IMG/VR virus record: IMGVR_UViG_3300023174_002543
Location: 62,001-126,000 of that record
DNA: 64,000 nt
Reading direction: 5' to 3' (one strand)
Under the pieces are notes generated by a model, which searched no databases, had not been told where the DNA came from, and was given only the letters and a program-made list of their open reading frames with translations. A program made the translations under genes and the position numbers. Positions within the stretch are counted from its first letter, which is position 1. Each line of letters begins with the position of its first letter. Below, one piece after another: positions 8,334 to 42,281 of this stretch.

Positions 8334-8347
8334 ATAAGTATATAAAT
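8334..8347 (+). promoter_or_regulatory. Late promoter-like ATAAGTA / TATAAAT
   Basis: Intergenic ATAAGTA immediately followed by TATAAATG overlapping the start codon. Confidence 0.4.
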
Positions 8348-10232
8348 GGCAATCAAAAATTTTAATGTTGAACATGGCTTATCTGTCAATGATGTAACAA
8401 TCGTAGACAGTAATGCCAATGTTACTGCAAATACTTTAATATCTAATAACATTATTAGTACTAGCGGCACTAATAGTAATATTACCATCAATCCTGATGG
8501 TACCGGTATTATTGATGTAAGCAATAAAAAGATTAGTAATTTAGCTGAACCAATACTTGCAACAGACGCTGCTACAAAGGGTTATGTAGATGCGACTGCT
8601 CAAGGATTGAGTATTAAAAACTCAGTTCAATATGCAACAACTACTAATATTTTATTAGACGGAACAGTAACTACAATAGATGGTAAAACAGTAACTACCG
8701 GAGATCGTGTTCTAGTTAAAGACCAAACAGATAAAAGTAAAAATGGTATATACATAGCAAATACCACAGGTTCATGGACTCGTTCAGCAGATATGAATAT
8801 TGCTACTGAGATTTATGGTGCATTTACATTCGTTGAGACAGGTACTGAAAATCAATCAACTGGATGGGTAACTACTAATTCACCGCTAGATCCATTCACA
8901 TTGAATACAACTGATATAATATGGACACAGTTTAGTGGTACAGGTTCAGATATCAGTACAGATATAAACACGTTACATGTAACAGGTGGTACAAAAGATT
9001 ATGTATTGGCAGCTTCTGATAGTTTAGGTAACGTTGCTTTTGCTAATATTGCAAATTATTTCTTAGTTAAAACTGATATAACTACAGTGGTTGCAGGATC
9101 TACATTGGCCTTTACAATAGACTATGCTAATACTAGCTATCCCGGTGGAATATATACATTACAGCAATTGGGCCCGGTAAGTATGTCAATAAGCGACCAG
9201 TGGTCAATATCAGGTTCTAACGTTGGGACAACAAAAAACGCTTATGCAAATTATGTAGCAACTCAAGTTAATACTGCAAATGTAACAATAGCATTTACGT
9301 TAGCTAATGCTAATTTTAGTTTACAAACAACGGATACATTAACTATTGGTAGCACAGTAATAAATGACAGCAGTTCACCTAATCTAAGAACATTGTTATC
9401 TTCAATAAATGGAGTAAGTTCAGGTACTGTTACTATTCCAGCTACGAGTTTAAATGCAAACATAAACGCTAATGGGTTGAATACGGTAACAAACATAGTA
9501 AGCGTCAACCTTACTAATAGTAGAGGATCAACCGGTGCAGGTGTAAGTACGGCAAGTGGTACGAGTTTAGTGGCGACTGCTCCTACTGCATATAGTGTAA
9601 ACTCTATATCAGGTAGCTTCCCAAGTAGCAGTATACCATATTGGAGTTTAAATCAAACGTTTAACTGGACAGTGAGTACTACGGGCACTACTAGTGCGGG
9701 CAATTTAACATATAGCGGTGGCGCAATAAGCACTACCAGTTTATCAAGTGTGGGTGGCGCAAGCGGAACTAGCGGTAGCATAGATAGCACAAGTAGTTAT
9801 ACTATTACAACTAGTGATTATTATGGATTAGGATTAAATGGATATGGTAATAGAACTATTCCTAGTGCAGTAAATGGTACAGTAAGTGCTGCAACTAAAT
9901 ATTATCCGTTGTTTTGGAAGACAACTTCCAGTAGTGCATTACCAACCATAACAGTTAGTGATAGCCGTAATTCTAATAACTATGCTCTAGGGCAAGGTGC
10001 TACTACATCAACCACTGCTAGTAATTATCTTTGGTTAGCTATACCAAACGCAGGTAATGCTGCACCTTTGGCAAGTCATACCTTTAAGCATGTGTTTGGT
10101 GGATTTGATATTGTTGATACTCCTACGGTAACGGGCACACAATCTATATCTTCAGGCGGACAGAGTTACAATTATTCAATATATGGCTTTAGTGGTTTTA
10201 CGACAGCATCACTTATAATAACAACATCATAA
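8346..10232 (+). CDS. Tail-fibre-like protein with DAATKGYVD stalk, GDRVLVKDQ domain and C-terminal ~380-aa region 'Y'
   Basis: 628 aa; ISNLAEP..TDAATKGYVD and GDRVLVKDQT..KNGIY..WTRSAD are common phage fibre motifs; C-terminal region paralogous to 19408. Confidence 0.65.
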   Translation: MAIKNFNVEHGLSVNDVTIVDSNANVTANTLISNNIISTSGTNSNITINPDGTGIIDVSNKKISNLAEPILATDAATKGYVDATAQGLSIKNSVQYATTTNILLDGTVTTIDGKTVTTGDRVLVKDQTDKSKNGIYIANTTGSWTRSADMNIATEIYGAFTFVETGTENQSTGWVTTNSPLDPFTLNTTDIIWTQFSGTGSDISTDINTLHVTGGTKDYVLAASDSLGNVAFANIANYFLVKTDITTVVAGSTLAFTIDYANTSYPGGIYTLQQLGPVSMSISDQWSISGSNVGTTKNAYANYVATQVNTANVTIAFTLANANFSLQTTDTLTIGSTVINDSSSPNLRTLLSSINGVSSGTVTIPATSLNANINANGLNTVTNIVSVNLTNSRGSTGAGVSTASGTSLVATAPTAYSVNSISGSFPSSSIPYWSLNQTFNWTVSTTGTTSAGNLTYSGGAISTTSLSSVGGASGTSGSIDSTSSYTITTSDYYGLGLNGYGNRTIPSAVNGTVSAATKYYPLFWKTTSSSALPTITVSDSRNSNNYALGQGATTSTTASNYLWLAIPNAGNAAPLASHTFKHVFGGFDIVDTPTVTGTQSISSGGQSYNYSIYGFSGFTTASLIITTS

Positions 10233-10233
10233 T

Positions 10234-12510
10234 ATGGCAGCAGCAACCCTTACCTTCCCCTCACAAACGTTACTTAAGAACGTTGTTGTTCCAGTTGACG
10301 GAACAGATGCTGCTACCAAAGAATATGTAGATGGTAGAACAGGCGCCGGCAGTGTTGCTGCAGCCGGTTCTAATACACATATTCAATTTAATGATGCCGG
10401 TAGTATAGGTGCCAGTGCAAATTTAACTTTTAATAAATCAGGTAATATACTTACTATTACCGGTAACTTAGTATCAAGTAACGCTAATCTTGGTAATCTA
10501 GCAACAGCGAACTATATAAACATTGCAAATAATTTATCAGTCGCCGGCGATGCAAATATTACTGGTAACTTGACAGTACTTGGTACAGTATCCTACATTG
10601 AATCTACTACTACATATGTTACAGATCCTTTATATGAAATAGGCGGAGGTTCGCAGGGTACAACTTTATCAACGGATGATAATAAAGATCGCGGTACTAT
10701 ACTTCACTATTTTGACACTACTCCTATAGACGCTTTTATAGGTTGGGATAATAGTAATGCTGAATTTGCTATTGCGAGTAACGTTTCTGTAACTGATAAT
10801 ATTGTAACTTATAATAATTTTGGTAATATCAGAGTAGGTAATATTTTTGCCGGAAACGTAGTAAATGCTAACTTCTATACCGGTGACGGTGGACTACTTT
10901 CTAATATTATAGCATCTAGTGGTACTGCAACTACAGTCACGGCAAGCACACAACCAAATATTACTAGTCTCGGCAACTTAGTAGAATTGACAGTAGGTCA
11001 AGGATTATCTAATGTATACATTAATGGTTTTGGTAATATTACGGTTGGTAATAAGATAACTACTACCAATTTAACTGTAACCGGTAACTCTATGTTACAA
11101 GGAAATACAGAATTTCAACAAATTGTAACTCTAACATCCTCAGCGAGTAGTACAAATTCTAGCACCGGTGCATTGATATTAACATTAGGTGGTTTAGGTG
11201 TATATGGTAATATACATTCAGGAATGGGAGTCACTGGAGTTACTTTAACTGGTAATATTACTACCGCAAGTCAACCTAATATTACCTCTTTAGGTAATCT
11301 AGTAAGTTTAATAGTAGGAAACTCTACTGCAAATAGTACGTTTGGTAATGGAACTATAACTCTAACAGGTGCAGGTAATATTACAGGTGGTAATCTAGTA
11401 AGTGCTAATTATTTTACCGGCACATTAACAACCTCAAGTCAGCCAAATATAACATCAGTCGGGACGTTAAATAACACAACATTAGGCGCAAGTAACTCAT
11501 TATCAGGTGGTAATCTAGTAAGTGCTAATTATTTTACCGGCACATTAACAACTGCAACTCAACCAAATATTACAAGTTTAGGAACACTAGTAAACGTAAC
11601 GGTGTCCGGTACATCTAATTTAGGAAATGTAGGAAATGTTAGGATTACCGGTGGTAGTTCAGGCCAATACTTAAAAACAGACGGTACTGGAAATTTAAAT
11701 TGGGCTACAGTAGATACATCAAGACTAGCGAACGGTACTACTGAAATAGAGTTATTAGAAGACGGTAATATTAATTTTACCGTAGGAACACAAACAAATT
11801 CAGTTATTTTTGTGGATGATGGTAGTGTTGTTCTTGGTTCAGGTACCGGTGGAAATATCGAAGGTGCCAATGTTGTAAATGCAAATACTTTAGCAGCAAG
11901 TAATACAATAACACGAAATGGAAGAAACGTACCAACATTTGTTAGTTCAGGCACAATGCCAACTAATCCGTTATTAGGTGATGAATGGTACGATCAGGAT
12001 GACGACAGAGTTTATCAATACATCTATGATGGTGCAAATTATAATTGGGTAGAGATAAGCAGTGGTTACATCGCTGCCAATGTAGCTGCTCAAACCGGAA
12101 CATTAGTAGTAAGAGATAGTAATGCCAACGTATATGCCAACACTATACATGCCAATGCTTTAAGCGTTACTGGTACTGCTAAAATGGGTAGTATAGTCAG
12201 CGCAGGAAATGGACAGTCAGTATCTAATTCAACTGAAACTATGATTGATACCTTTCCCAAAACTTTATACAGGTCTGCTAAATACATTATATCAGCAAGA
12301 AATGATGATGGTTTCGAAGTGGCAGAAATGCTACTAATACATGACAATATGATTAGTTTTATACAAACATATGGTGATGTTAGTACTGGGACAGTACAAG
12401 ATATTGTAACTTTTAGTAGCAATATTGTAAGCGGAAACGTCTGTCTATATGCAACAGGGAGTAATTCAAATACATACGTAAATTTAGTATCAACTTATGT
12501 AACTGATTAA
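10234..12510 (+). CDS. Fibre-like structural protein ending in domain X
   Basis: 758 aa; DAATKEYVD, QFN..ASANLTF, DP..DRG module, four QPNIT repeats, GDEWY module, X domain. Confidence 0.65.
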   Translation: MAAATLTFPSQTLLKNVVVPVDGTDAATKEYVDGRTGAGSVAAAGSNTHIQFNDAGSIGASANLTFNKSGNILTITGNLVSSNANLGNLATANYINIANNLSVAGDANITGNLTVLGTVSYIESTTTYVTDPLYEIGGGSQGTTLSTDDNKDRGTILHYFDTTPIDAFIGWDNSNAEFAIASNVSVTDNIVTYNNFGNIRVGNIFAGNVVNANFYTGDGGLLSNIIASSGTATTVTASTQPNITSLGNLVELTVGQGLSNVYINGFGNITVGNKITTTNLTVTGNSMLQGNTEFQQIVTLTSSASSTNSSTGALILTLGGLGVYGNIHSGMGVTGVTLTGNITTASQPNITSLGNLVSLIVGNSTANSTFGNGTITLTGAGNITGGNLVSANYFTGTLTTSSQPNITSVGTLNNTTLGASNSLSGGNLVSANYFTGTLTTATQPNITSLGTLVNVTVSGTSNLGNVGNVRITGGSSGQYLKTDGTGNLNWATVDTSRLANGTTEIELLEDGNINFTVGTQTNSVIFVDDGSVVLGSGTGGNIEGANVVNANTLAASNTITRNGRNVPTFVSSGTMPTNPLLGDEWYDQDDDRVYQYIYDGANYNWVEISSGYIAANVAAQTGTLVVRDSNANVYANTIHANALSVTGTAKMGSIVSAGNGQSVSNSTETMIDTFPKTLYRSAKYIISARNDDGFEVAEMLLIHDNMISFIQTYGDVSTGTVQDIVTFSSNIVSGNVCLYATGSNSNTYVNLVSTYVTD
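11384..11552 (+). repeat. 49-bp perfect direct repeat, 120-bp period
   Basis: CAGGTGGTAATCTAGTAAGTGCTAATTATTTTACCGGCACATTAACAAC at 11384-11432 and 11504-11552. Confidence 0.85.
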
Positions 12511-12542
12511 AATAAAAATAGCAATGGGGATTGTTTGGAACT

Positions 12543-13094
12543 ATGGCTAATAAGTATTTTAACGTAAGACAAGGTCTCCAGACCGGAAATATAACGTTAG
12601 ACGCCACGACGGGAAATGCCAATGTAGGCAATTTGTCCACTACGGACTTGAACGTAGCTGGAAACTTAAATTCGAACCTAATACCTAAGGTCGCATCTGG
12701 CGTACCTTCAGTTCTGTCATTAGGTACCAATCTACAACGATTCAAAGATTTATATCTGTCAGGAAATGTCAATCTTCCTGGTGGACAAACACTCACTGGC
12801 AATACGGATACTGCTAGTTTTTCTGGGAATGTATATACCCCAGGTGCACTAACAGCAAACGTCATAAATGCCAACACTATAGCAGTAAATACAGAATTTA
12901 CGCTAAATAGTACTATAAATTCAACTTCTACTGATACTGGTGCATTTACAACTATGGGCGGAATCGGAGTGAAGAAGGATGTAACAGTGGGGGGTGCTAT
13001 TAATTTAGCCAACTTTGCTGTTACAGGAACAACAGTTAGAAGCAGCATTTACCATGATGATACTTCTAACTCAATAACGTTTAAATTTAATTGA
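12543..13094 (+). CDS. Short fibre-like connector protein ending SITFKFN
   Basis: Track starts at TTG 12531; ATG 12543 gives MANKYFNVRQG, which matches the paralogous N-termini; C-terminus matches that of 14047. Confidence 0.6.
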   Translation: MANKYFNVRQGLQTGNITLDATTGNANVGNLSTTDLNVAGNLNSNLIPKVASGVPSVLSLGTNLQRFKDLYLSGNVNLPGGQTLTGNTDTASFSGNVYTPGALTANVINANTIAVNTEFTLNSTINSTSTDTGAFTTMGGIGVKKDVTVGGAINLANFAVTGTTVRSSIYHDDTSNSITFKFN

Positions 13095-13107
13095 TAGGAC
13101 ATAATAA

Positions 13108-14004
13108 ATGGTAGCACCAACAACAATCGGAGCAAGATTATTAAATGATGGTACACTCTACACAGTGGGTACATTTGATGACACCGGCACTACAACAACC
13201 GGACATTCAATCACAAAAGAACATATATTTGCTGATGAATTAGACGAATTAGCACTAAATACCGGTGCCCCATCTGGAGGCTCGGTGTTGCTTAATGGAT
13301 CTAGTCAACGCATAGATGTCACTGGGTCAGAGAGTTTTATGTTTGGCACACAGGACTTCACTATTGAAGGATGGTTCGTATTATCGTCAACTTCATACGC
13401 ACGACTATGGTGTTTCCCAGACGGAGATAACGTAGAAGCCGTAAATGGTACCTTATATTACTGGAATGGTACAGGTAGTGTTTTGACCGCAGGTACGGGA
13501 TCAGCTCCGCAAGGTCGTTGGTTTCATGTAGCACTAGTAAAACGTAACGGTGTAGCAAAAGTATATCTAAACGGTGTAGCAGTAATTACTGATAATAGTC
13601 CATATAATTCAATATCATCAAGACCATTAAGTATTGGCGGTGAAGTAGGTCTTAGTACAGTTGGACAAGATCCAACTGCAGGATCAAGAGACGGTTGGTT
13701 AAATGGCAACGTAACAAATTTTCGTATAGTAAAGGGTCTAGCAGTTTATACAAGTAATTTTAGTACTGCTTATAACCCTCTTACTTCAATACCAAACACA
13801 GTTTTATTACTAAATGTAGTAAATTCTGGTAATTTAGTAACAGATAGTTCGTCACAGAATCAAACTGTTACCAATATTGGCAGTGCGACTTATAGCGCAC
13901 TAACTCCGTTAAGTACATACTTCAACGGCGCAATGAAACAATTGAAAAATGGTGCATTGCTACTAGCAAATGAGTTAGTTGAAACAGACTCAGTATTATC
14001 ATAA
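13108..14004 (+). CDS. Small core protein 'Z' carrying one inserted LamG/concanavalin-A-like domain
   Basis: DFTIEGW, WFHVALVKRNG, VTNFRIVKGLAVYTSNF; N- and C-terminal flanks align with the 76-aa ORF at 19149. Confidence 0.75.
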   Translation: MVAPTTIGARLLNDGTLYTVGTFDDTGTTTTGHSITKEHIFADELDELALNTGAPSGGSVLLNGSSQRIDVTGSESFMFGTQDFTIEGWFVLSSTSYARLWCFPDGDNVEAVNGTLYYWNGTGSVLTAGTGSAPQGRWFHVALVKRNGVAKVYLNGVAVITDNSPYNSISSRPLSIGGEVGLSTVGQDPTAGSRDGWLNGNVTNFRIVKGLAVYTSNFSTAYNPLTSIPNTVLLLNVVNSGNLVTDSSSQNQTVTNIGSATYSALTPLSTYFNGAMKQLKNGALLLANELVETDSVLS

Positions 14005-14046
14005 ACGTAATACATTAAACTTAAACATTCTTAAAGGAAAAATAAA

Positions 14047-17000
14047 ATGGCAAAATTAAAAAGCGGTACTAGAGTTTATGGTGATGCAACAGTCGACCAA
14101 ACACTAACCGTAGGTAATATAACAATCAGCGGTAACTTAGTAGTTCAAGGACAAACAACGTCTGTAGATAGCACAGTTACTAGAGTAGAAGACCCAATCT
14201 TTGAGATTGGTGGCGGTGAAGCAGGCGCGGCACTTACATCAAATGACGGTAAAGAACGTGGCATATTGATGCATTATTATGATGGCGCCGTAAAAGACGC
14301 TTTCATGGGATGGCATACAAGTAATGCACGTTTTGAATTTGGAGCAATAGCTACTGAATCATCTGGTAACATTACAGTTGGAACATACGGTAATCTTAAA
14401 GCAGGTGTATTCTTTGGTGATGGCGGCGGATTAAGCAATATCGTTGGTGGTAACGTAAGCGGAGACGTAGCAGCTGCAAACTATGCAAACTATGCAGGTA
14501 CAGTAACAGGGTCAGCACAAAGTAATATTACCAGTACTGGTACATTAACAAGTTTAACAGTTAGTGGTACAAGTAATGTTGCGGCTATTAGTTCAAATGG
14601 TGCTATTACTACTAGCGGTAGTATTACTGCAAATGGTGCTAGTTCAAATCTTACAATTGGTACATCAGCAGCAAATAATAGCGTTGCAAACATTTATGGT
14701 GACTTGAATGTTACCGGTAATCTAAATGGTACATTTACTGGTACTATCGGTGCTAAGGGCTCTAACACACACGTTCAGTTCAATGATAATGGTCAACAAA
14801 ACGGTGTTGCTGGATTTACATTCGACAAATCAACTAGCACAGTAAGTATCGCTAATATTGTTTTAGCAGGGGCTGCCGGAACTGCAAACTTTAAGGGTGA
14901 TATTAACTTAACAGGTACAAGTCAGACTATTGCTGGTGCCAACATTAAAGTTGATGCATCAACTCAATTAGAATTAGAAGGCGGAACAGCAAATATTACA
15001 TTGACTAGTTCTAATGTTAAATTAGCAACATCAGGTGGTACTGCTAATTTAGACAACACTGGTAAATTGACTGTATCTGGTGCTGCTGATTTTGCAGGCG
15101 GTAACTTCACAGTCACTACAGCTGGTAATATTGATGCTAAACGCGGTGATTTCACAAGCATCAAAAACACCGGATTAACTGATAATCAACTAGTGTTCAC
15201 TACAGGTAATGTATTGGGTGGTAATGCAGGATTAACATATGCATCTAACACATTAAGTGCTAATAACTTTGCAACTACAAATGCAAATATTACTGGTAAT
15301 ATTACAACTAAGTATAACAGTGGTAAATTATTGACTACTGATGTTGGTGGTAATTTAATTGAATCAAATGTATCATTTTCGTCAAATGAATTAACAGTTG
15401 CTAATGCTAATATAACAAATACTGCAACAATTGCTAATTTAAATATTACTAGTTTAACAACAACAGGTGGATTGTTATTCACTGGCGGTGCTAGCGGTAA
15501 TGTTACCGAGTCAGCAACTTTAACATTCACAGCGATTACTAACACACTATCTACTACTAATATTACTGCTAGTGGAAATGTAGTAGCTAATGCAATAACA
15601 TCTAATAACTTAACTGCTACACAATTAGTATTTGCTGGTGCTAGCAAAGAGTTAACATCTGATTCACACTTAACTTTCACAACAGTTAGTAACACATTAT
15701 CTACTACTAATATTACAGCTAGTGGAAATATTATTGGTGCTAGAGTTACTGCAAACAATGTGGCTGATTCTGAAATCGCATATGCTAACATTGACCATAC
15801 ATTGGTTGGTGCGTCTTCATTCACATATAATGCCGGTACAAGTACTTTATCTGCTCCTAATGTTGTTTCAAGTTCTAGTATAATAGGTGCTAAAGTTTCT
15901 GCAAATAATATTGCCGATACTCAAATCGCATATGCTAACGTTGACCATACTTTAGTAGGTAGTTCATCATTCACATATACTCCACTTACAGGCACATTAG
16001 CAGCTAATAATGTCTCAGTAACTAGTAATGTAACAGCTGCTAATGTATTCGCTAGTACTGTTGGTAATTCAGCTACAATGTTATATGGTAATGGTTATAA
16101 CATTACCGGTGTAGTTGCTAGTTCTGCTAATGCGGAAACACTAACTGGTACATATATCAATGCAGGTGTTACTGGTTCTAGTTTAACTAGTTTAGGTACC
16201 ATGAATAATATCACTATGGGCGGTGCTAATAGCATCAGTGGTGGTAATTTATTAAGTGCTAATTATGTCACAGGTACATTAACAACTGCAGCACAACCTA
16301 ACATTACTAGCTTAGGTAATTTAACTGCTGCAAATGTAACTGGTAATTTACAAGCAGGTGGTATTTTAACTGATAACTTGTACTATGCAAATGGTGGTGT
16401 TTGGGACTTACAACAAGCCGCAGGTGACACTAGTGAGATTCAATTCAACAACGGTGACAACTTTGCCGCAAGTGCTAACTTCACATTTAACTCAGGTTCT
16501 AGTACACTAACTGTAACTGGTACTGGTAATATCACAACGGTAAATGCTACAACAGTAACCGCTACAACTGGTAATATCACAACTGTAAATGCTACAACAG
16601 GTAATATCACAACTGTTAACGGTACAACTGGTAACATTACTACTGTAAATGCTACAACAGTAACAGCTACAACTGGTAATATCACAACTGTAAACACTAC
16701 AGATATTGTTGCATCAGGTAATGCTAATATCACTGGTTGGTTAAAGGCTGCTGATACAGTTATTACTGGTAACTTAACTGTTACAGGTACAACAACAAGT
16801 GTCAATACAACTACATCACAATTAACTGATCCATTACTTGATTTAGGTAACGGTGCAAATGGTGCAGCATTAACAACTAATGATGCATTTGATCGTGGTT
16901 TAGTAATGCATACACGTGTTGCGGGCACAAACAAAGACTTGTTCATGGGTTGGGATACATCTAACGCTGAATTTGTTATGGCTAAAAACGTAACAGTATC

Positions 17001-19137
17001 AGATAACGTTGTTACAGTTCCAGGAACTACTGATGCTGAAAAATTAGCAAACTTGGCTGATTTGCGTTTAGCAAACATTTATGCATACAATGCAAACTTT
17101 GGTGGTGTCGTATTCTCACAAGGTAATGTTACATTAGGTGCTGGATCATTCTTGAACGGTAATGTTAATGGTAATATCAGTGGTACTATTACTGTAACAG
17201 GTGGTAATGGTGCAATTCAATTTGCAAATGCAACCAATGCAATGACATCTAGTTCTAATTTGAATTTCAATGATTCTCTTGCTAGATTAACACTAGGTAA
17301 TGGAACAACTACCGGTGAACTTAAGGCTAATGTAGTAACTGCAAGTTATGTAGCAGGTACATTGACAACTGCAAGTCAGCCAAATGTAACTTCAGTTGGT
17401 ACACTAACAAGTTTAGATGTTACTAATGCAGTAACTGCAGGTTCATTCAAGTCTGACACATATCAGTATGCAAACGGTAGTCCAATCGACTTCCAAACTG
17501 CTGCAGGTAGTGCAACACAGATCCAGTTCAAGTCATCAAGTGGTAACGACTTAGATGCAAGTGCAAACTTAACATTTAATTCATCTACTAGTAACTTAAC
17601 AGTTAATGGTAACATTATTACTGGTGCAGGTTCTGGTGGTAATATCAGTGGTGCTAACGTAGTTAGCGCAACATTGTTCAGTGGTTCTGGTGCTAACTTA
17701 ACAAATATTAACGGTGCAAACGTAAGTGAAGTTGCATTAGCAACTAATGTTACTGCAAGCGCACAAGGTAATATTACTAGCGTTGGTACATTAACTGGAT
17801 TGACAATTGTTGCTAACGGTGACATTACTCTAAGCGGAGTAGACTCAAATATCAGTGGTGCTAATCTAATAAGTGCTGGTTACTTTAGTGGTAATGGTAG
17901 CGCATTGACTGGTGTAACTGCTACGTCAATGAATGCAGCTAATTTGACTGGTTCAACATTGTCAAGCAATGTAACAGGTTCTAGTTTAACTAGTGTTGGT
18001 ACATTAACAAGTTTAACTGTAACTGGTTCTATCACATCATCTACTGGTGACTTAGTTGCAACACTTGGTAATGTAAGTGGTAATGTTATTACAGGTACTA
18101 CATTAACTGGTACATTAAGTACTGCAGCACAACCAAACATTACAAGTGTTGGTACATTAACAAGTTTAACTGTTGCTAATACAGGTGGTTCTGGTAACAT
18201 TACTGCTGATAATGTATTTGCTAATGCAGGTATTGTAAGTGGTCAATACTTATACGGTAATGGTATAAACATCTCTAACATTGCTGGTGCTAACGTAAGT
18301 GGTTATGTACAGAATGCTAATATTGCAAATGTTGCTTACGCAGTGGCTGCAGGTAACATCACAGGTACTACATTGAACAGCAACATTGTAACTTCTAGTT
18401 TAACAACTGTTGGTACATTGGGTAGTTTAAGTGTAACTGCTACTATTACTGCTGGTAATGTACTTGCTAGTAATATTGGTAATGCAACAACAATCTTACG
18501 TGGTGATGGTGCTAATATTACAGGTGTAACAGCTAGTGCAATTGATGCAGGTAATTTAACTGGTCAAACATTATCAAGCAATGTAATTTACAGTAGCTTA
18601 ACATCTGTTGGTACACTAAGTGGACTAACTTCTAACGGTACTGTAAACTTTACTACTGCAAGTAACGTATCATTGGGCCCAGTCGCTAATGTTCATATTA
18701 CAGGCGGTACAACTGGTCAATATCTACAAACTGATGGTTCTGGTACATTAAGTTGGTCAACTGTCTCATTATCAAATATCAATAATGGTACAAGTAATGT
18801 CTCAGTAGCTAACAACGGTAACGTAACTGCCGCAATAGCCGGTAGTAATGTCATCACTATCGCTACAGCTGGATTAACTGTAACAGGTATCATTGAAGCA
18901 ACAGGAAATATTCTTGGTAATAATATTACTAGCAATAATTTCATTACTGCTAATGGTACAACTGCTGCAACAAGTGCAGCAACTGGTGCAATTAAATCAG
19001 AAGGGGGTATATCTGCTAAAGGTAACATCTACACAGGTGATGCATTAGGTTTCGCACATGGTTCTGGTAACACAGATAGTGCTGCATACATCAAATATAA
19101 CGCAACTGCAGGTAGCATAGACTTTATCTTCAATTAA
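14047..19137 (+). CDS. Long repetitive fibre protein (1696 aa)
   Basis: Starts MAKLKSGTRVYG; two DP..DRG modules, several QFN modules and QPNIT-type repeats, pentapeptide repeat; ends SIDFIFN. Confidence 0.7.
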   Translation: MAKLKSGTRVYGDATVDQTLTVGNITISGNLVVQGQTTSVDSTVTRVEDPIFEIGGGEAGAALTSNDGKERGILMHYYDGAVKDAFMGWHTSNARFEFGAIATESSGNITVGTYGNLKAGVFFGDGGGLSNIVGGNVSGDVAAANYANYAGTVTGSAQSNITSTGTLTSLTVSGTSNVAAISSNGAITTSGSITANGASSNLTIGTSAANNSVANIYGDLNVTGNLNGTFTGTIGAKGSNTHVQFNDNGQQNGVAGFTFDKSTSTVSIANIVLAGAAGTANFKGDINLTGTSQTIAGANIKVDASTQLELEGGTANITLTSSNVKLATSGGTANLDNTGKLTVSGAADFAGGNFTVTTAGNIDAKRGDFTSIKNTGLTDNQLVFTTGNVLGGNAGLTYASNTLSANNFATTNANITGNITTKYNSGKLLTTDVGGNLIESNVSFSSNELTVANANITNTATIANLNITSLTTTGGLLFTGGASGNVTESATLTFTAITNTLSTTNITASGNVVANAITSNNLTATQLVFAGASKELTSDSHLTFTTVSNTLSTTNITASGNIIGARVTANNVADSEIAYANIDHTLVGASSFTYNAGTSTLSAPNVVSSSSIIGAKVSANNIADTQIAYANVDHTLVGSSSFTYTPLTGTLAANNVSVTSNVTAANVFASTVGNSATMLYGNGYNITGVVASSANAETLTGTYINAGVTGSSLTSLGTMNNITMGGANSISGGNLLSANYVTGTLTTAAQPNITSLGNLTAANVTGNLQAGGILTDNLYYANGGVWDLQQAAGDTSEIQFNNGDNFAASANFTFNSGSSTLTVTGTGNITTVNATTVTATTGNITTVNATTGNITTVNGTTGNITTVNATTVTATTGNITTVNTTDIVASGNANITGWLKAADTVITGNLTVTGTTTSVNTTTSQLTDPLLDLGNGANGAALTTNDAFDRGLVMHTRVAGTNKDLFMGWDTSNAEFVMAKNVTVSDNVVTVPGTTDAEKLANLADLRLANIYAYNANFGGVVFSQGNVTLGAGSFLNGNVNGNISGTITVTGGNGAIQFANATNAMTSSSNLNFNDSLARLTLGNGTTTGELKANVVTASYVAGTLTTASQPNVTSVGTLTSLDVTNAVTAGSFKSDTYQYANGSPIDFQTAAGSATQIQFKSSSGNDLDASANLTFNSSTSNLTVNGNIITGAGSGGNISGANVVSATLFSGSGANLTNINGANVSEVALATNVTASAQGNITSVGTLTGLTIVANGDITLSGVDSNISGANLISAGYFSGNGSALTGVTATSMNAANLTGSTLSSNVTGSSLTSVGTLTSLTVTGSITSSTGDLVATLGNVSGNVITGTTLTGTLSTAAQPNITSVGTLTSLTVANTGGSGNITADNVFANAGIVSGQYLYGNGINISNIAGANVSGYVQNANIANVAYAVAAGNITGTTLNSNIVTSSLTTVGTLGSLSVTATITAGNVLASNIGNATTILRGDGANITGVTASAIDAGNLTGQTLSSNVIYSSLTSVGTLSGLTSNGTVNFTTASNVSLGPVANVHITGGTTGQYLQTDGSGTLSWSTVSLSNINNGTSNVSVANNGNVTAAIAGSNVITIATAGLTVTGIIEATGNILGNNITSNNFITANGTTAATSAATGAIKSEGGISAKGNIYTGDALGFAHGSGNTDSAAYIKYNATAGSIDFIFN
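16525..16704 (+). repeat. Coding tandem repeat of 12 pentapeptides (GNITT/VNATT/VTATT)
   Basis: Read directly from the translation; 15-nt periodicity in the DNA. Confidence 0.85.
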
Positions 19138-19148
19138 GGAGATAGGTC

Positions 19149-19379
19149 ATGACATCTAATGTTGCGGCTAGACTAGATAGATCCGGAAAGTTCTACACCA
19201 GAGATGGTGTAGTGCTTGACGAGGTTACTCAATCAACTCACGGTATTACGCCAACAAAGGTATATGCAGGTGAGTTGGATGAAGTGACAACTCCGGACAG
19301 TAATAGGGTCATGCAGCAAAAGAAAACGGGTAAACTTATTATTTCAGGAGTTTTTGACGAGGTGTCTGGAATAACATAA
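19149..19379 (+). CDS. Small core protein 'Z' (76 aa) without insert
   Basis: AAGGAG RBS; ARL..SG.FYT..G..LDE and MQQKKTGKLIISG.FDE align with the flanks of 13108. Confidence 0.75.
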   Translation: MTSNVAARLDRSGKFYTRDGVVLDEVTQSTHGITPTKVYAGELDEVTTPDSNRVMQQKKTGKLIISGVFDEVSGIT

Positions 19380-19382
19380 GTA
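19376..19382 (+). promoter_or_regulatory. Late promoter-like ATAAGTA
   Basis: One mismatch to ATAAATA; overlaps a stop codon, 26 nt upstream of the ATG at 19408. Confidence 0.35.
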
Positions 19383-19407
19383 ATAGTATAGGAATAAACC
19401 AGAGACC

Positions 19408-21783
19408 ATGGCACTATTAAAATCAGGTACAAGAATATACGGTAACGCTATTATAGACACTAATCTGTCTATTGATGGTACTACCGTATCCTCTGATTAT
19501 CAAACAGGTGCATTAGTAGTTAAGGGCGGGGTTGGCATCGCCGGTAACGTTTTTATTAATGCCAACTTAAACGCTAAAGATACATTAATTACAGGTAATC
19601 TAACAGTTACCGGTACAACCACAACTGTAAATTCAACTACTACCCAATTAGTAGATCCAGTCATTGATATAGGTGGAGGGGCAAATGGTGCTGCACTTAC
19701 TACTAATGACGGATTGGCTAGGGGTCTAGCATTAAATTATTATAACGTTGGTGCAAAGACAGCATTCTTAGGATTTGATAATGCAAATGGGCAATTTGCT
19801 TTTGGTAGTAACGTAAGTAATACTACAGGCACATTGACTATAAACACTTACGGTGATGTAAAAGCAAATAGTTTTGTTGGAAACCTAGTAGGTACTGCTA
19901 ATTTATCTCAAATAGAAGTTAACGGTATATCAAGATTTGGCAACGTGGGTAATGTTAAAATTACCGGCGGCGCTGATGGGTATGTGTTAAGAACAGACGG
20001 ACAAGGTAACTTAACTTGGACAACACCGTCGACTGCTGTTGCAGCTGGATCTAATAATCAAGTACAGTTTAACAACACTAATGCATTTAATGCTAGTGCT
20101 AACTTTACATTCAATAGTTCAACTAAGACATTAACAGTAGATAATATTGTTAGTAACGGTTCCGGGCTAACAAGTTTAACAGGTGCTAATGTAACTGGAT
20201 TTGTACCAAATGCAAATATAGCAAATACTGCATATAATGTTGATGGCGGCAATGTATCAGGGCAAGTAGGTAATGCATTAATAGCCGGTACAGTATATAC
20301 AAACGCACAACCAAATATAACTTCAGTTGGGACACTAAGTTCATTATCAGTTACCGGAAATATAAGTTCAGGTAACGCTACTTTAGGTAACTTAACAACA
20401 AGTAATTATTTTGTTGGTAATGGTAGTTTATTAACTTCAATAACTGGTGCTAATGTAACTGGTCAAGTAGCAAACGCATTAATAGCCGGTACTGTATATA
20501 CAAACGCACAACCAAATATCACAAGTGTCGGTAATCTAAGCAATTTATTTGTAGGTAATGCAACATCAAATGTAGTTATATCAAATGGTAATATAACTAC
20601 CTCAGGAGCATTAAGTGTTGGCGGCAATATTACAGCAAATTATATTACTGCTAACTTAGCATATGCTACTGGTTTAGGTGGTGCAGGTGGCGCAGCCGCA
20701 ACATATGTTACAAGTAACATTACAAGTATTGTGGCAGGTAGTACTATTGCAGTTGTAGCGGATTATGCTAATGCTAGTTATCCAGGTGGTGTATTTACAA
20801 TCGCACAATTGGGTCCGGTAACATTAAGCGCAACAGATGTTTGGACTGGCGGGACATCAACTAAAAATGCATACGCTAATTTTCTTGCAAGTTCAATCAA
20901 TACCAAAGATGTTAATGTTACATTAACATTAGCAAATGCTACATTTGACGTAAAAAGCACAGATAGTATAACGATTGGTGGTAGTAGCGTAACAGGTGCA
21001 AATCTGTTAGCATTGAATATTACTGGTAATGGAACATACACTATACCAAATACATATTTTAGTAGTACTGTTCAAACCACTACTACTAGTGCGGTCAGTA
21101 TAAGTTTAACTACAAGTAGAGGTGTTTATTCTAGTAGCGGAACAACACTTACTGCAACTCAACCAGTAGCATTTACATTAAATGCATTAACAGGTAGTTT
21201 CCCAAGTAGTTCAGTTCCTTACTTTAACTTAAATCAAAGTTTCAATTGGAGTGCTAGTGTAACTGGGACAGTAAGTTCTGGTAACATTACTTATAGCGGT
21301 GGCGCAATAAGTCCAACAAGTTTAACTGGTGCAGGTGCAACTAGTGGAAGTAGTGGAAGCATTGACAGTACATATAGTTATACTATAACATCCAGTGACT
21401 ATTATGGTGCTGGATTATATGGTTATGGTTCTAGAACAATACCAAGTACAGTAAATGGTACTGTAACTGCAGCAACAAAATACTATCCAGTATTCTATAA
21501 AATAACAAATAATTCAACTATACCAACGTTGACTACTAGCGATAGTTATCTAACACGTAACTATGCAATAGGTGATGGTGCAACAACTAGCGCAACAACT
21601 AGTCAATATTTATGGATAGCAATTCCAGGCACAAGTAGTCATACTTTTGCTTATACATTCTTAGGCAGTCAAGTTGGTCAAGATCCAGCAGTGACTGGCA
21701 GTCAAACAATTTCTGGATATTCTTATAATATCTATGGGTTCACGAATTTCTCTGTGGCCACTGCTTTATATACGGTGACATAA
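19408..21783 (+). CDS. Fibre-like protein with C-terminal region Y
   Basis: 791 aa; starts MALLKSGTRIYG; C-terminal ~355 aa paralogous to 8346 (YPGG..T..QLGPV, FPSSS.PY..LNQ.FNW, TKYYP.F.K, Y.IYGF). Confidence 0.65.
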   Translation: MALLKSGTRIYGNAIIDTNLSIDGTTVSSDYQTGALVVKGGVGIAGNVFINANLNAKDTLITGNLTVTGTTTTVNSTTTQLVDPVIDIGGGANGAALTTNDGLARGLALNYYNVGAKTAFLGFDNANGQFAFGSNVSNTTGTLTINTYGDVKANSFVGNLVGTANLSQIEVNGISRFGNVGNVKITGGADGYVLRTDGQGNLTWTTPSTAVAAGSNNQVQFNNTNAFNASANFTFNSSTKTLTVDNIVSNGSGLTSLTGANVTGFVPNANIANTAYNVDGGNVSGQVGNALIAGTVYTNAQPNITSVGTLSSLSVTGNISSGNATLGNLTTSNYFVGNGSLLTSITGANVTGQVANALIAGTVYTNAQPNITSVGNLSNLFVGNATSNVVISNGNITTSGALSVGGNITANYITANLAYATGLGGAGGAAATYVTSNITSIVAGSTIAVVADYANASYPGGVFTIAQLGPVTLSATDVWTGGTSTKNAYANFLASSINTKDVNVTLTLANATFDVKSTDSITIGGSSVTGANLLALNITGNGTYTIPNTYFSSTVQTTTTSAVSISLTTSRGVYSSSGTTLTATQPVAFTLNALTGSFPSSSVPYFNLNQSFNWSASVTGTVSSGNITYSGGAISPTSLTGAGATSGSSGSIDSTYSYTITSSDYYGAGLYGYGSRTIPSTVNGTVTAATKYYPVFYKITNNSTIPTLTTSDSYLTRNYAIGDGATTSATTSQYLWIAIPGTSSHTFAYTFLGSQVGQDPAVTGSQTISGYSYNIYGFTNFSVATALYTVT

Positions 21784-21784
21784 T

Positions 21785-22714
21785 ATGGCATTAATATTCC
21801 CCGCACCAGCCCAGATTAAGAACTTATTAGCGCCGACTGATAATACTGATGCCGCAACCAAATTATATGTTGATAATCAAGTAAGTGGAGCAACTGTCAG
21901 TGTATCAGGTAGTAATACACAATTACAATTTAACAACGCCGGTTCTTTTGGTGCAAGTAGTAATTTAACATTTAATAGTTCAACTAATCTATTAACAGTT
22001 ACTGGTAATATTGCAACCAGTAATTTATCAGTAACAGGTAATGTGTCATTTACTGGTGCAAATGTAAGTTTAGGTAATATAAGTAATCTACGTATAAGTG
22101 GTGGTACTGCTGATTATGTTCTAAAAACAGATGGAACAGGCAATCTAAGTTGGACTGCACAAAGCGTAGGAACATTAACTGCTGACGTAGATGCATTTAC
22201 TGGTGATGGAAGCAATGTTGCATTCACATTAGCAAATACACCTGCAGGTGAAAACTTCACAATGGTTGCCGTACAAGGTGTACTACAGCCTAAAACAACT
22301 TATTCATTAAGTGGTAATGTATTAACATTTACTAGCGCACCCCCAAGCACAGCAGTAGTTGAAGTCACTACGTTTGGTGGCTCTGTTATGTCAGGTGGCG
22401 GTGGCGGCGGAACTAGTCCTGCGTTAACTTGGAACATTGCAAGTAGTAATGCAACAATGACTGCAAACAATGGATACTTTGTAGACACATCAAGTGGTGC
22501 AAAAACAATGACATTACCAACTAGTGCAACGTTAGGTGATACTATTCGTATCAATGACTTGGCTGGATCTTTCTCTACAAACAACTTAACAGTAGCAAGA
22601 AATGGTCATAAGATTCAGGGTATTGCACAAGATTTATTAGTAGATGTAGAACAAAGTAGTTTTGGTTTAGTATACAGTAACAGCACATATGGCTGGAAAG
22701 TATTGGAGTTATAA
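21785..22714 (+). CDS. Fibre protein with FTGDG domain and a C-terminal domain resembling T4 gp34 N-terminal repeats
   Basis: DAATKLYVD; VDAFTGDGSNVAFTL; GYFVDTSSGAKTMTLPT..LGDTIRIND..GSFSTNNLTVARNGHKIQG..GW. Confidence 0.6.
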   Translation: MALIFPAPAQIKNLLAPTDNTDAATKLYVDNQVSGATVSVSGSNTQLQFNNAGSFGASSNLTFNSSTNLLTVTGNIATSNLSVTGNVSFTGANVSLGNISNLRISGGTADYVLKTDGTGNLSWTAQSVGTLTADVDAFTGDGSNVAFTLANTPAGENFTMVAVQGVLQPKTTYSLSGNVLTFTSAPPSTAVVEVTTFGGSVMSGGGGGGTSPALTWNIASSNATMTANNGYFVDTSSGAKTMTLPTSATLGDTIRINDLAGSFSTNNLTVARNGHKIQGIAQDLLVDVEQSSFGLVYSNSTYGWKVLEL

Positions 22715-30137: not shown

Positions 30138-30138
30138 C

Positions 30139-30510
30139 ATGGCAGCACCAAATTTAATCGGGGCAACAACAATAAACGGTAAAACCGCAGGGGCAAATTT
30201 AACAACAACAAGCGCAACACTAGTATTAAACAATGCGTCAAGTTCTGGTAAATGTTTGAAAGTAAACACACTAAACGTTACTAATACTACTAGTTCAGCA
30301 GTAAACATAACTATTGCATGGTACAATCAAGCAAGTTTAGGCGGCACAGCTTTTGCTATAGCAAGTGGTATGAGTGTTCCTGGTAATGCAACATTGAACG
30401 TAATTGATAAAAGTAGTCAATATTACTTAGAAGAAAATACAAGTTTAGGCGCCACCGCCGGTACCGGCAGTTCATTGATAGTAACTTGTAGTTACGAGGA
30501 CATTAGTTAA
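30139..30510 (+). CDS. Small beta-rich adaptor-like protein
   Basis: 123 aa; paralogue of 41919 (MAxPN..TTI.GKTAG, YLEEN.SL, CSYE.IS). Confidence 0.6.
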   Translation: MAAPNLIGATTINGKTAGANLTTTSATLVLNNASSSGKCLKVNTLNVTNTTSSAVNITIAWYNQASLGGTAFAIASGMSVPGNATLNVIDKSSQYYLEENTSLGATAGTGSSLIVTCSYEDIS

Positions 30511-41917: not shown

Positions 41918-41918
41918 A

Positions 41919-42281
41919 ATGGCAAATCCAAACATAGTAAACGTAACGACAATCACAGGAAAAACAGCAGGACAGGCTATAACAACATCACCAACTGCAA
42001 TAGTAACTAATAGCGCCAGTAGTGGAAAATTATTAAAAATAAACTCATTATATATTTCAAATGTTAACGGGACAGGAAGTGCAGACGTTACAGTAGATGT
42101 TTATAAAAATGGTGCTACTGCTTATAGATTGGCATATTTAATCACAGTACCGGCAAAATCAACTATAAATGTAATTGCAAAAGATGTACAAGTTTATTTA
42201 GAAGAAAATGATAGTTTAAGATTAACTGCTAGTAGTAGTAGTTACCTTGAAGGTGTATGTAGTTATGAGGAAATTAGTTAA
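41919..42281 (+). CDS. Small beta-rich adaptor-like protein
   Basis: 120 aa; paralogue of 30139, ends CSYEEIS. Confidence 0.6.
   Translation: MANPNIVNVTTITGKTAGQAITTSPTAIVTNSASSGKLLKINSLYISNVNGTGSADVTVDVYKNGATAYRLAYLITVPAKSTINVIAKDVQVYLEENDSLRLTASSSSYLEGVCSYEEIS

What the first reader, a model, noticed from the sequence alone, without database searches (positions are those of the whole stretch)
9076..21880. Junction type 2: duplicated region Y followed by a DAATK-start gene across an identical 12-nt junction
Seen: 8346 and 19408 have unrelated N-halves but paralogous C-terminal regions of ~355-385 aa. Both stop one base before the next ATG within the identical string CATAATATGGCA (10228-10239 and 21779-21790). 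The next genes begin L.FP....KN...P.D.TDAATK.YVD. The junction is conserved while the coding DNA around it has diverged. Inference: selected translational coupling and a stoichiometric partnership; a fused product by readthrough or frameshift is possible but unsupported.
Basis: partly seen in the sequence, partly recalled or inferred. Interest (0 to 1): 0.62.

Follow-up and report, generated by a model that had tools for sequence, protein, structure and literature searches.

The report
Conserved fibre-gene joint in jumbo phage
Two pairs of neighbouring fibre genes in a 367-kb freshwater phage share a conserved unit: a C-terminal beta-sandwich region, a stop and start codon almost touching, and a 30-33-residue N-terminal peptide on the next protein. 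The same unit occurs in all 32 related phage loci examined, so it is most likely a translationally coupled connector between two fibre proteins, which is real and tidy but of a familiar kind.

Summary
CATAATATGGCA sits at 10228-10239 and 21779-21790 and nowhere else in the 367-kb phage genome. The upstream proteins share only a C-terminal region Y (52% identity, E 8e-106). The downstream proteins share an N-terminal head ending in DAATK.YVD.

Within the window the 12-nt identity is weak evidence. Six of the bases are stop and start codons, and the alignment has three other exact runs of 12 nt or more. Homologues make the case.
- In 32 of 32 related loci (Y 31-76% identical), Y ends its protein at a TAA and a head-type gene follows.
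- The gap is 1 nt in most loci, and 0, 2 or 3 nt in a few. Two distant loci have 15 and 29 nt.
- Most junctions have no Shine-Dalgarno site.
- The last codon (TCA) and the second codon (GCA) are conserved at synonymous sites.
- The last ~105 residues of Y and the head travel together. One locus carries exactly this patch swapped in, and two classes of the pair persist in two related jumbo phages.

Best reading: a translationally coupled docking pair that joins two fibre proteins. A frameshift or readthrough fusion is disfavoured: all three frame relations occur, there is no slippery site or RNA structure, and none of the 66 homologue clusters is fused. Binding itself is unproven. The result is a new variant of a known kind, of moderate interest.

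The parts
8346..10232 (+). Gene for the upstream fibre-like protein of pair 1 (P0001, 628 aa). The N-part is unrelated to pair 2. It carries its own internal neck motif at aa 66-82.
   Evidence: ORF list, translation, PHROG hits on residues 11-260 only.
9066..10229 (+). Region Y, copy 1 (aa 241-628): a string of Ig/FN3-like beta-sandwich domains.
   Evidence: 52% identity to copy 2. AF2 model pLDDT 75, all-beta, with FN3 matches at Z 8.7 for Y residues 175-290. 66 homologue clusters, with Y always C-terminal.
9900..10229 (+). Yc, the last beta-sandwich domain of Y, copy 1 (aa 519-628). This is the part that travels with the head.
   Evidence: AF2 pLDDT 93, pTM 0.87. No close solved relative, best Z 4.7. 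Mosaic patch in L010.
10228..10239 (+). Junction 1: last two bases of the final Ser codon, TAA, one spacer base, ATG, GCA.
   Evidence: No Shine-Dalgarno site upstream, -1.2 kcal/mol. RNA here is unusually unstructured, z +2.73.
10234..12510 (+). Gene for the downstream fibre protein of pair 1 (P0003, 758 aa).
   Evidence: Fibre repeats are shared with many window proteins.
10234..10332 (+). Head, copy 1 (aa 1-33): a 10-residue extension specific to this system, followed by the generic fibre neck motif that ends in DAATK.YVD.
   Evidence: Head alignment. Profile positions 11-39 match solved fibres just after their anchor domains.
19408..21783 (+). Gene for the upstream fibre-like protein of pair 2 (P0002, 791 aa). 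Its N-terminus is shared with the 1696-aa protein at 14047.
20707..21780 (+). Region Y, copy 2 (aa 434-791).
21451..21780 (+). Yc, copy 2 (aa 682-791).
   Evidence: Alignment A3. Class partition together with the head.
21779..21790 (+). Junction 2: the same 12 bases. A GGTGA lies 6 nt upstream of the ATG and may serve as a weak Shine-Dalgarno site.
   Evidence: The orthologue in a related jumbo phage has TAAATG with gap 0.
21785..22714 (+). Gene for the downstream protein of pair 2 (P0004, 309 aa): head, fibre repeats, a DUF4183-like part, and a C-terminal domain resembling the region near the N-terminus of long tailspike families.
21785..21874 (+). Head, copy 2 (aa 1-30).

Best explanation
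The window lies in the structural region of a 367-kb freshwater T4-like jumbo phage. Just downstream of the prohead protease and major head protein genes is a battery of mosaic fibre genes.

Two of these gene pairs contain the same conserved joint cassette:
- about 360-390 C-terminal residues made of Ig/FN3-like beta-sandwiches (region Y), whose last ~105-110 residues (Yc) form the core;
- a TAA stop;
- zero to three bases;
- an ATG that opens a 30-33-residue head on the next protein.

The head consists of a short extension specific to this system (M-A-x-L-x-F-P-S-P-T) followed by the neck motif (L-K-N-x-x-x-P-x-x-x-x-D-A-A-T-K-x-Y-V-D). In T7-type tail fibres that motif follows the N-terminal anchor domain.

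Proposed mechanism (inferred):
1. Ribosomes that finish the upstream protein restart at the adjacent ATG. The junction is unstructured and mostly lacks a Shine-Dalgarno site, so the two chains are made in equal numbers and close together.
2. The anchor-less head then docks on Yc of the upstream protein. The upstream protein thereby serves as the anchor or proximal segment, and the downstream protein as the distal or branch segment of one fibre.
3. Everything outside the cassette (the upstream N-part and the downstream shaft and tip) is freely shuffled.
4. The phage keeps two diverged, probably non-cross-reacting versions of the connector.

Shown: the anatomy, the conservation, the co-segregation of Yc and the head, and the lack of fusion signals. 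Inferred: reinitiation, physical docking, and orthogonality of the two versions.
For: **Conserved adjacency**
- 22 IMG/VR loci have Y at 40-76% identity. In every one, Y is the C-terminus of a protein of variable length (421-1470 aa) that stops at TAA. The next ATG lies 1 nt (18 loci) or 2 nt (4 loci) away and opens a protein of 143-921 aa with the head.
- The pattern continues in more distant loci: L028, L045 and L047 have gap 1, L048 gap 3, L034 gap 0, L046 gap 15 and L025 gap 29.

**Y is always C-terminal**
- It is C-terminal in all 66 homologue clusters found among 1.84 billion proteins.

**Signals at the junction**
- Anti-Shine-Dalgarno pairing is -0.3 to -1.3 kcal/mol at most junctions. 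The genome median is -4.3, and a third of genes reach -6 or stronger.
- There is no conserved RNA structure, and junction 1 folds worse than 199 of 200 shuffles.
- At the last codon, TCA is used in 16 of 17 Ser cases against a 27% baseline. At codon 2, GCA is used in 17 of 17 Ala cases against a 53% baseline. Neighbouring third positions carry 1-2 bits of entropy.

**Yc and the head behave as one unit**
- Only about 33 residues of the head are conserved; after them the downstream proteins diverge into different architectures.
- L010 matches L017 at 70-96% on both flanks. Across the last ~105 residues of Y and the first ~30 of the next protein it instead matches L008/L004 at 80-93%, against 40-56% for L017.
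- No pair of loci has head identity of 85% or more with Yc identity of 66% or less.
- Two classes persist in two related jumbo phages. Yc/head identity is 72/84 and 62/77 between orthologues but 47-52/46-54 across classes, whereas the whole of Y (last 360 aa) is as similar across classes (63%, L007 against W2) as between orthologues (64%), so the N-terminal part does not sort by class.

**The head lacks its own anchor**
- The head profile matches solved fibres immediately after their 125-150-residue anchor domains: 8vbx_R at 126-160, 9m4c_B at 152-180, 8i4m_e at 136-159.
- In other phage fibres the motif lies 46-657 residues into the chain.

**Precedent**
- In phage KP32, the 29-residue N-terminal conserved peptide of RBP2 docks on the branching domain of RBP1 (PMC13352976).
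Against: - No direct evidence of binding exists. The only complex prediction gave no verdict.
- Tight stop-start borders are common in this genome: 21 with a 1-nt gap, and many ATGA and TAATG overlaps. Tightness alone is therefore not special.
- Copy 2 and its orthologue, together with L028 and L048, have usable Shine-Dalgarno-like pairing of -6.8 to -7.4 kcal/mol. Reinitiation is therefore not obligatory everywhere.
- Two distant homologues have gaps of 15 and 29 nt, and their heads are diverged.
- The mosaic patch in L010 is bounded by strongly conserved motifs. It could reflect where homologous recombination is easiest rather than selection for a co-adapted pair.
- The codon statistics treat related sequences as independent.
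- Yc weakly resembles domains in uncultured-phage proteins labelled tail fiber (TM 0.5-0.65). This would also fit a distal binding domain.
Confidence: 0.6

Rival explanations
1. Linkage without contact. The two modules are conserved for separate reasons: Yc as a distal Ig-like binding or decoration domain, and the head as a generic fibre N-terminus that docks elsewhere on the virion. The tight border would then simply be the compact operon style of this phage, inherited with the duplication.
For: - Borders with a 1-nt gap, and ATGA or TAATG overlaps, are common in the genome.
- The DAATK neck motif is generic in phage fibres.
- The complex prediction gave no support.
- Yc resembles domains in uncultured-phage 'tail fiber' proteins only at fold level.
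- Strings of Ig-like domains with a conserved C-terminal domain are also the plan of T4 Hoc head fibres (PMC10385173, abstract), and this cluster follows the major head protein gene.
Against: - Adjacency holds in 32 of 32 loci down to 31% identity, even though both flanks have been replaced many times.
- Yc and the head sort into the same classes while the rest of Y does not.
- The L010 patch spans exactly Yc plus the head.
- The head protein has no anchor domain of its own.
- Neither Pfam nor the PDB profile search listed a Hoc match.
Confidence: 0.27
2. Programmed recoding. A share of ribosomes shifts frame or reads through the TAA and makes a Y-head fusion protein, so the pair is really one long fibre.
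For: - In gene order, the pair looks like a single long fibre split just before the neck motif.
- Single-chain fibres with the motif 460-657 residues into the chain do exist.
Against: - The stop is TAA in every locus.
- Gaps of 0, 1, 2, 3, 15 and 29 nt put the downstream ATG in all three frames relative to the upstream gene, so no single recoding event is conserved.
- The codons before the stop (ACW TCA, or GTG ACA) cannot re-pair after a +1 or -1 shift, as the sequence itself shows.
- RNAalifold finds no conserved pairs, and junction 1 is unusually unstructured.
- None of the 66 homologue clusters has Y followed by the head in one chain.
Confidence: 0.03
3. Assembly factor. The Y-bearing protein, or its Y region, acts as a chaperone needed to fold or trimerise the downstream fibre and is not itself joined to it in the virion.
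For: - Fibre genes are often accompanied by dedicated assembly proteins (general knowledge of T4 gp38/gp57 and Tfa proteins).
- Equal and local synthesis would suit a chaperone.
Against: - Known fibre chaperones are small and are encoded downstream of their client.
- The Y proteins are 421-1726 aa long and have fibre repeats of their own in the N-part.
- The conserved contact candidate on the client is its N-terminus, whereas fibre chaperones usually act on C-terminal tips (general knowledge).
Confidence: 0.06

Closest known systems
[quoted passage not shown]
   Same: - Two receptor-binding or fibre proteins are encoded by neighbouring genes.
- The second has no anchor domain and carries a short conserved N-terminal peptide (29 aa there, 30-33 aa here), followed by a freely exchangeable body.
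- The peptide and its docking domain form a modular pair.
   Different: - In KP32 the docking domain is T4 gp10-like and lies near the N-terminus of RBP1. Here the candidate docking domain is an Ig-like beta-sandwich at the extreme C-terminus, and no gp10-like match was found in Y.
- Binding is proven there and not here.
- The sequences are unrelated.
T4 long tail fibre joints (gp34-gp35-gp36-gp37). The conserved gp36 C-terminus / gp37 N-terminus border is flanked by variable regions (own knowledge, not checked with tools).
   Same: - Consecutive genes encode consecutive fibre segments.
- The C-terminus of one joins the N-terminus of the next.
- The joint is conserved while the flanks recombine.
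- The related loci here are T4-like; L022 carries gp19- and gp20-like genes by my reading of its ORFs.
   Different: - No sequence similarity to T4 fibre proteins was detected.
- Y is built of Ig/FN3-like sandwiches.
- The head carries the T7-type neck motif.
T7 gp17-type tail fibre N-terminus (Pfam PF03906) and solved fibres 8vbx_R, 9m4c_B and 8i4m_e
   Same: The neck motif ending in DAATK.YVD matches the end of this domain and the same position in solved fibres.
   Different: - Those fibres have a 125-150-residue anchor domain before the motif in the same chain. Here the chain starts only 10-12 residues before the motif.
- The Pfam scores (17.6 and 15.1 bits) are below the 25.2-bit cut-off.
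Translational coupling by termination-reinitiation at overlapping or abutting stop and start codons in bacterial and phage operons (general knowledge)
   Same: Stop and start lie 0-3 nt apart, most copies have no Shine-Dalgarno site, the local RNA is unstructured, and an A-rich context with GCA as second codon is present.
   Different: Nothing distinctive in the mechanism. What is unusual is how strictly this particular border is kept across proteins only 31-76% identical.
T4 Hoc head fibre (PMC10385173)
   Same: A string of Ig-like domains ends in a conserved C-terminal domain, and the gene neighbourhood lies just after the major head protein gene.
   Different: - No sequence or profile match to Hoc was listed.
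- Y is appended to long fibre-repeat proteins.
- Y is always followed by a head-type gene.

Membership tests
Translationally coupled gene pair (termination-reinitiation) | Stop codon of the upstream gene within a few bases of the downstream start | tested here: met
   The gap is 1 nt at both window junctions. In homologues it is 0-3 nt in 30 of 32 loci.
Translationally coupled gene pair (termination-reinitiation) | No independent ribosome-binding site for the downstream gene | tested here: inconclusive
   Met at junction 1 and most homologues, at -0.3 to -1.3 kcal/mol. Junction 2, L034, L028 and L048 have -6.8 to -7.4 kcal/mol.
Translationally coupled gene pair (termination-reinitiation) | Downstream translation depends on translation of the upstream gene | not testable with these tools
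   This needs a reporter with an early stop in the upstream gene. No RNA or ribosome-profiling runs hold this phage.
Programmed frameshift or readthrough fusion | Slippery site or leaky stop, with a conserved frame relation | tested here: not met
   The stop is TAA in all loci. The codons before the stop cannot re-pair after a shift. Gaps of 0, 1, 2, 3, 15 and 29 nt give all three frame relations.
Programmed frameshift or readthrough fusion | Conserved stimulatory RNA structure | tested here: not met
   RNAalifold finds 0 pairs on 18 sequences. Junction 1 has z +2.73 and junction 2 has z +0.26.
Programmed frameshift or readthrough fusion | Fused homologues or a fusion product | tested here: not met
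   None of the 66 clusters has Y followed by the head in one chain. The fusion product itself cannot be tested here.
T7 gp17-type tail fibre N-terminal domain (Pfam PF03906) | Full N-terminal anchor domain scoring above the gathering cut-off | tested here: not met
   Only profile positions 109-151 of 157 match in P0001, at 17.6 bits. P0004 scores 15.1 bits. The cut-off is 25.2. P0003 and P0004 begin 10-12 residues before the motif.
T7 gp17-type tail fibre N-terminal domain (Pfam PF03906) | Neck motif at the end of the domain | tested here: met
   Head profile positions 11-39 match solved fibres at residues 126-160, 152-180 and 136-159, with E 5e-7 to 0.014.
Branching-domain / conserved-peptide RBP pair (KP32 type) | Short conserved N-terminal peptide on the second protein, followed by an exchangeable body | tested here: met
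   About 33 residues are conserved and the architectures diverge afterwards.
Branching-domain / conserved-peptide RBP pair (KP32 type) | T4 gp10-like branching domain in the first protein | tested here: not met
   Y models as Ig/FN3-like sandwiches. Pfam, PHROGs, the PDB profile search and the fold searches listed no gp10-like match in Y.
Branching-domain / conserved-peptide RBP pair (KP32 type) | Physical binding of the peptide to the domain | tested here: inconclusive
   The complex prediction returned no verdict, which counts neither for nor against. Only indirect co-segregation evidence is available.
Hoc-like head decoration fibre | Homology to Hoc or to its capsid-binding C-terminal domain | tested here: not met
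   Pfam, the PDB profile search and the fold searches listed no Hoc match for Y or Yc. Only the general plan of Ig-like beads is shared.

The most novel reading that the evidence does not exclude
The Y/head pair is a stably split fibre. On this reading, the anchor domain that in T7-type fibres precedes the neck motif has been replaced by Yc, a beta-sandwich carried on the C-terminus of a different fibre protein. The 10-residue extension (M-A-x-L-x-F-P-S-P-T) of the downstream chain completes or clamps that sandwich non-covalently, in the manner of donor-strand complementation. Phages would keep several orthogonal versions of this connector, at least two per jumbo phage, so that each distal fibre finds only its own proximal fibre. 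That would make it a natural, portable plug-and-socket system for building multi-segment or branched fibres.
Probability: 0.25. Interest if true: 0.6.

Novelty: new variant of a known kind. Interest (0 to 1): 0.42.

Why it matters
If Yc and the head are a true docking pair, they define a compact (about 140-residue), sequence-recognisable connector. It shows which fibre proteins of uncultured freshwater T4-like and jumbo phages are assembled onto which, and these genomes encode a dozen or more mosaic fibre proteins whose wiring is otherwise unreadable.

Two diverged versions in one phage would be a natural example of orthogonal connectors. That is useful as a design principle for modular receptor-binding proteins, as has been done with the KP32 conserved peptide.

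The case also gives a clean comparative example of a stop-start border kept under selection, including at synonymous sites, across proteins that have diverged to about 31% identity.

Tried and rejected
- **Complex prediction.** Y (394 aa, alignment A1) with the head (60 aa, alignment A2) scored 0.01-0.02 against a mark of 0.32. The tool's verdict is 'no answer', so it counts neither for nor against binding. A trimeric set-up would exceed the size limit for full Y and was not run.
- **Cultured-phage search.** Megablast of both gene pairs and tblastn of Y against 50,697 phage records found nothing. tblastn of the head plus the next 47 residues found only the generic repeat after the head, in Flavobacterium and cyanophage records.
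- **Family scans.** Pfam and PHROGs gave no family for Y. The hits on P0001 cover residues 11-260 only, and the single hit on P0002 is a weak match to a 2079-aa structural protein family. The ESM Atlas feature search gave no usable hit.
- **Fold searches.**
  - Whole Y gave only generic FN3/Ig strings.
  - Yc alone gave no PDB match above Z 4.7.
  - BFVD and the Atlas gave only fold-level matches to uncharacterised phage proteins.
  - Two weak Yc rows come from phage tail complexes: 8ck1_B at Z 3.8 and 9efk_AE at Z 3.7. I noted them as a lead that Yc might resemble a fibre anchor domain, but they are too weak to use.
- **RNA structure.** None is conserved at the junction.
- **Head-gene search.** Only 10 were confirmed, and the one with the motif right at the protein's N-terminus is a known Y locus. 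The reverse exclusivity (head implies Y) therefore stays untested.
- **RNA runs.** None hold this phage. Laying contigs only confirmed the sequence.
- I considered reading L034 (gap 0, in frame) through its TAA to fold a natural 'fusion'. I did not do it, because the genome shows no sign of an alternative code.
Full report
**1. What is there**

The window is bases 62,001-126,000 of a 367,104-bp virus record that CheckV rates as complete. The record is found in lake and freshwater metagenomes.

The window opens with a prohead protease and a T4-type major head protein (phrog_207 and phrog_138). A long run of plus-strand genes for mosaic fibre-like proteins follows. These share short repeat modules in many combinations.

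The four ORFs of the finding are:
- 8346-10232 (P0001, 628 aa)
- 10234-12510 (P0003, 758 aa)
- 19408-21783 (P0002, 791 aa)
- 21785-22714 (P0004, 309 aa)

**2. Checking the observation**

- The string CATAATATGGCA lies at 10228-10239 and 21779-21790. It has no other copy in the genome.
- P0001 241-626 and P0002 434-789 are 52% identical (E 8e-106). Their N-halves are unrelated.
- P0003 and P0004 align from their first residues over about 75 residues.

A DNA alignment shows one contiguous duplicated segment, about 9050-10480 against about 20700-22030, that runs across the gene border. Within it the 12-nt run is one of four exact runs of 12 nt or more, and the longest is 20 nt. Six of the twelve bases are the stop and start codons. 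A stop, one base, then ATG occurs at 21 other-or-same borders in this genome: 7 on the plus strand and 14 on the minus strand.

So the facts are right, but the window alone does not show selection on the junction.

**3. Homologues settle it**

A scan of IMG/VR with region Y returned 22 loci at 40-76% identity. In every one:
- Y is the C-terminal ~360-390 residues of a protein whose total length varies from 421 to 1470 aa.
- The stop is TAA.
- The next ATG is 1 nt away in 18 loci, or 2 nt away in one lineage of four contigs.
- The next protein (143-921 aa) begins with the same head.

A related 223-kb contig carries two copies, like the window. Its second copy is the orthologue of pair 2 and reads TAAATG, a gap of 0.

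An exhaustive profile-free search of 1.84 billion representative proteins found only 66 clusters with Y. In all of them Y ends the protein, and none has the head fused after it.

Contigs for more distant members (31-41% identity) gave gaps of 1 nt (L028, L045, L047), 3 nt (L048), 15 nt (L046, with an AAGGA) and 29 nt (L025). The next gene was head-type each time, although the DAATK part is degraded in L046, L047 and L025.

Adjacency is therefore 32 of 32, and a gap of 0-3 nt holds in 30 of 32.

**4. Signals at the junction**

- *Shine-Dalgarno usage.* The genome does use Shine-Dalgarno sites: G is enriched at -11 to -8, and a third of genes pair with the 16S tail at -6 kcal/mol or stronger. 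Junction 1 and most homologues pair at only -0.3 to -1.3 kcal/mol. Junction 2, its orthologue and two distant loci do have a GGTGA-type match of -6.8 to -7.4 kcal/mol.
- *Synonymous sites.* The last sense codon is TCA in 16 of 17 Ser cases (TCA is 27% of Ser codons in these genes). Codon 2 is GCA in 17 of 17 Ala cases (53% baseline). Nearby third positions vary freely. Relatedness inflates these odds, but the local contrast is plain.
- *RNA structure.* No structure is conserved (0 pairs on 18 sequences). Junction 1 is less structured than 199 of 200 shuffles.
- *Independent assembly.* An independent sample's contig reproduces 9000-10460 exactly.

**5. What the parts are**

- *Region Y.* It models as an all-beta string of Ig/FN3-like sandwiches (pLDDT 75; FN3 matches at Z 8.7 over Y residues 175-290).
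- *Yc.* The last domain, about 110 residues, models at pLDDT 93 and pTM 0.87 as a beta-sandwich with no close solved relative (best Z 4.7). It has fold-level matches only to uncharacterised phage proteins, some labelled tail fiber.
- *The head.* Only about 33 residues are conserved, after which the downstream proteins diverge into different architectures. Profile positions 11-39 of the head match solved tail fibres and tailspikes immediately after their 125-150-residue N-terminal anchor domains: 8vbx_R, 9m4c_B and 8i4m_e. This agrees with the weak Pfam hit to the end of Phage_T7_tail.
- *The motif elsewhere.* In other phage fibres the motif lies 46-657 residues into the chain.

The downstream proteins here are therefore anchor-less. 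They begin 10-12 residues before the neck motif, with an extension specific to this system (F-P-S-P-T-Q-L). That extension is the most persistent part of the head in distant homologues.

**6. Yc and the head behave as one unit**

- Across 18 distinct loci, head identity tracks Yc identity (Spearman 0.58). Yc identity does not track the sequence after the head (0.05).
- L010 is a clear mosaic. Both flanks match L017 at 70-96%, but the last ~105 residues of Y and the first ~30 residues of the next protein match L008/L004 at 80-93%, against 40-56% for L017.
- No pair of loci has a near-identical head with a divergent Yc.
- In the two related jumbo phages the two copies fall into two classes defined by Yc and the head together. 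Identities are 72/84 and 62/77 between orthologues and 47-54 across classes. Whole Y is as similar across classes as within them.

The caveat is that the patch is bounded by the best-conserved motifs, so recombination mechanics could produce it without selection for co-adaptation.

**7. Explanation**

The best reading is a joint cassette. The upstream protein ends in a docking domain (Yc). The downstream protein starts with a docking peptide in place of an anchor domain. The abutting stop and start deliver the two chains in equal numbers from the same ribosomes. The parts outside the cassette are shuffled freely. I put this at about 0.6.

The rivals are:
- *Linkage without contact* (0.27). Tight borders are common in this genome, and no binding evidence exists.
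- *Recoding fusion* (0.03). TAA is the stop everywhere, all three frame relations occur, and there is no slippery site, no RNA structure and no fused homologue.
- *Chaperone role for the Y protein* (0.06). This is unlikely given the size and fibre repeats of the Y proteins.

**8. Comparison with known systems**

- The closest functional analogue is the KP32-type pair. [quoted passage not shown] The present case differs in three ways: the candidate socket is an Ig-like C-terminal domain rather than a gp10-like N-proximal one, the sequences are unrelated, and binding is unproven.
- T4 long-fibre joints are a second analogue (own knowledge).
- The head is not a member of the T7 gp17 N-terminal family, since it has only that domain's terminal motif.
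- Hoc shares only the general plan of Ig-like beads.

**9. Verdict**

Its significance comes from comparative data rather than from the identical 12-mer.

The system is a new variant of known kinds (translational coupling, and a docking-peptide fibre pair) in a domain family with no Pfam or PHROG annotation. Interest is moderate at 0.42.

No restricted material was met.

Noticed in passing
window 26949-30510 and 41117-42281: This is a second duplication that crosses a gene border. The C-terminus of the 1062-aa protein (aa 833-1062) resembles the 266-aa protein at 41117 (37% identity). The small proteins that follow (123 aa at 30139, 120 aa at 41919) are 48% identical. Both borders are TAA, one base, ATG GCA.
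   Followed up: partly
window 51949 to beyond 64000 (genome 113949 onward); also a gene beginning at genome base 21234 (window coordinate -40767): There is an open reading frame of 8153 aa made of about 200-residue repeats that are also found in the 298-aa (13108) and 1604-aa (31680) proteins. A second giant ORF of 5727 aa lies upstream of the window.
   Followed up: no
L010 (IMGVR_UViG_3300027969_000341), about 4800-5210: This locus holds a recombinant patch of roughly 400 nt. It covers the last ~105 codons of the Y gene, the junction and the first ~30 codons of the next gene. The patch comes from another class, while both flanks match L017.
   Followed up: yes
window 9870-9913 and 10483-10515: In the laid metagenome contigs, other organisms' contigs match the window only at these two short islands, each with 3 differences. 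One lies at the start of Yc and the other about 80 codons into the downstream gene. They may mark conserved crossover points that flank the cassette.
   Followed up: no
window 8346-9065 (P0001 aa 1-240): The upstream protein of pair 1 has its own neck motif (aa 66-82, ending DAATKGYVD) after about 65 residues. Its N-part matches PHROGs labelled head decoration and virion structural protein (phrog_2647, phrog_24595). It may itself dock on something, and whether these are tail or head fibres remains open.
   Followed up: partly
window 22442-22714 (P0004 aa 220-309): The C-terminal domain of the 309-aa downstream protein matches positions 93-174 of several 1000-1160-aa tailspike and tail-protein PHROGs. 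That is a domain normally found near the N-terminus of spikes. P0004 may be an adaptor that offers a further attachment site.
   Followed up: no
L021-L024 (for example L022 500-5529): In small T4-like contigs the Y gene (421 aa, almost nothing but Y) sits after tail-tube-like and portal-like genes (my reading of the ORFs) and a collagen-repeat protein. It starts immediately after that protein's stop (gap 0). Its partner is only 143 aa.
   Followed up: partly
protein P0061 (825 aa, metagenomic): This homologue has the middle part of Y duplicated in tandem within one chain, and still ends with a Yc-like domain.
   Followed up: no
window 19408-20055 and 14047-14790: P0002 and the 1696-aa protein share their first ~216-247 residues (32% identity, E 2e-23). 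This may be a common attachment domain used by two different fibres.
   Followed up: no
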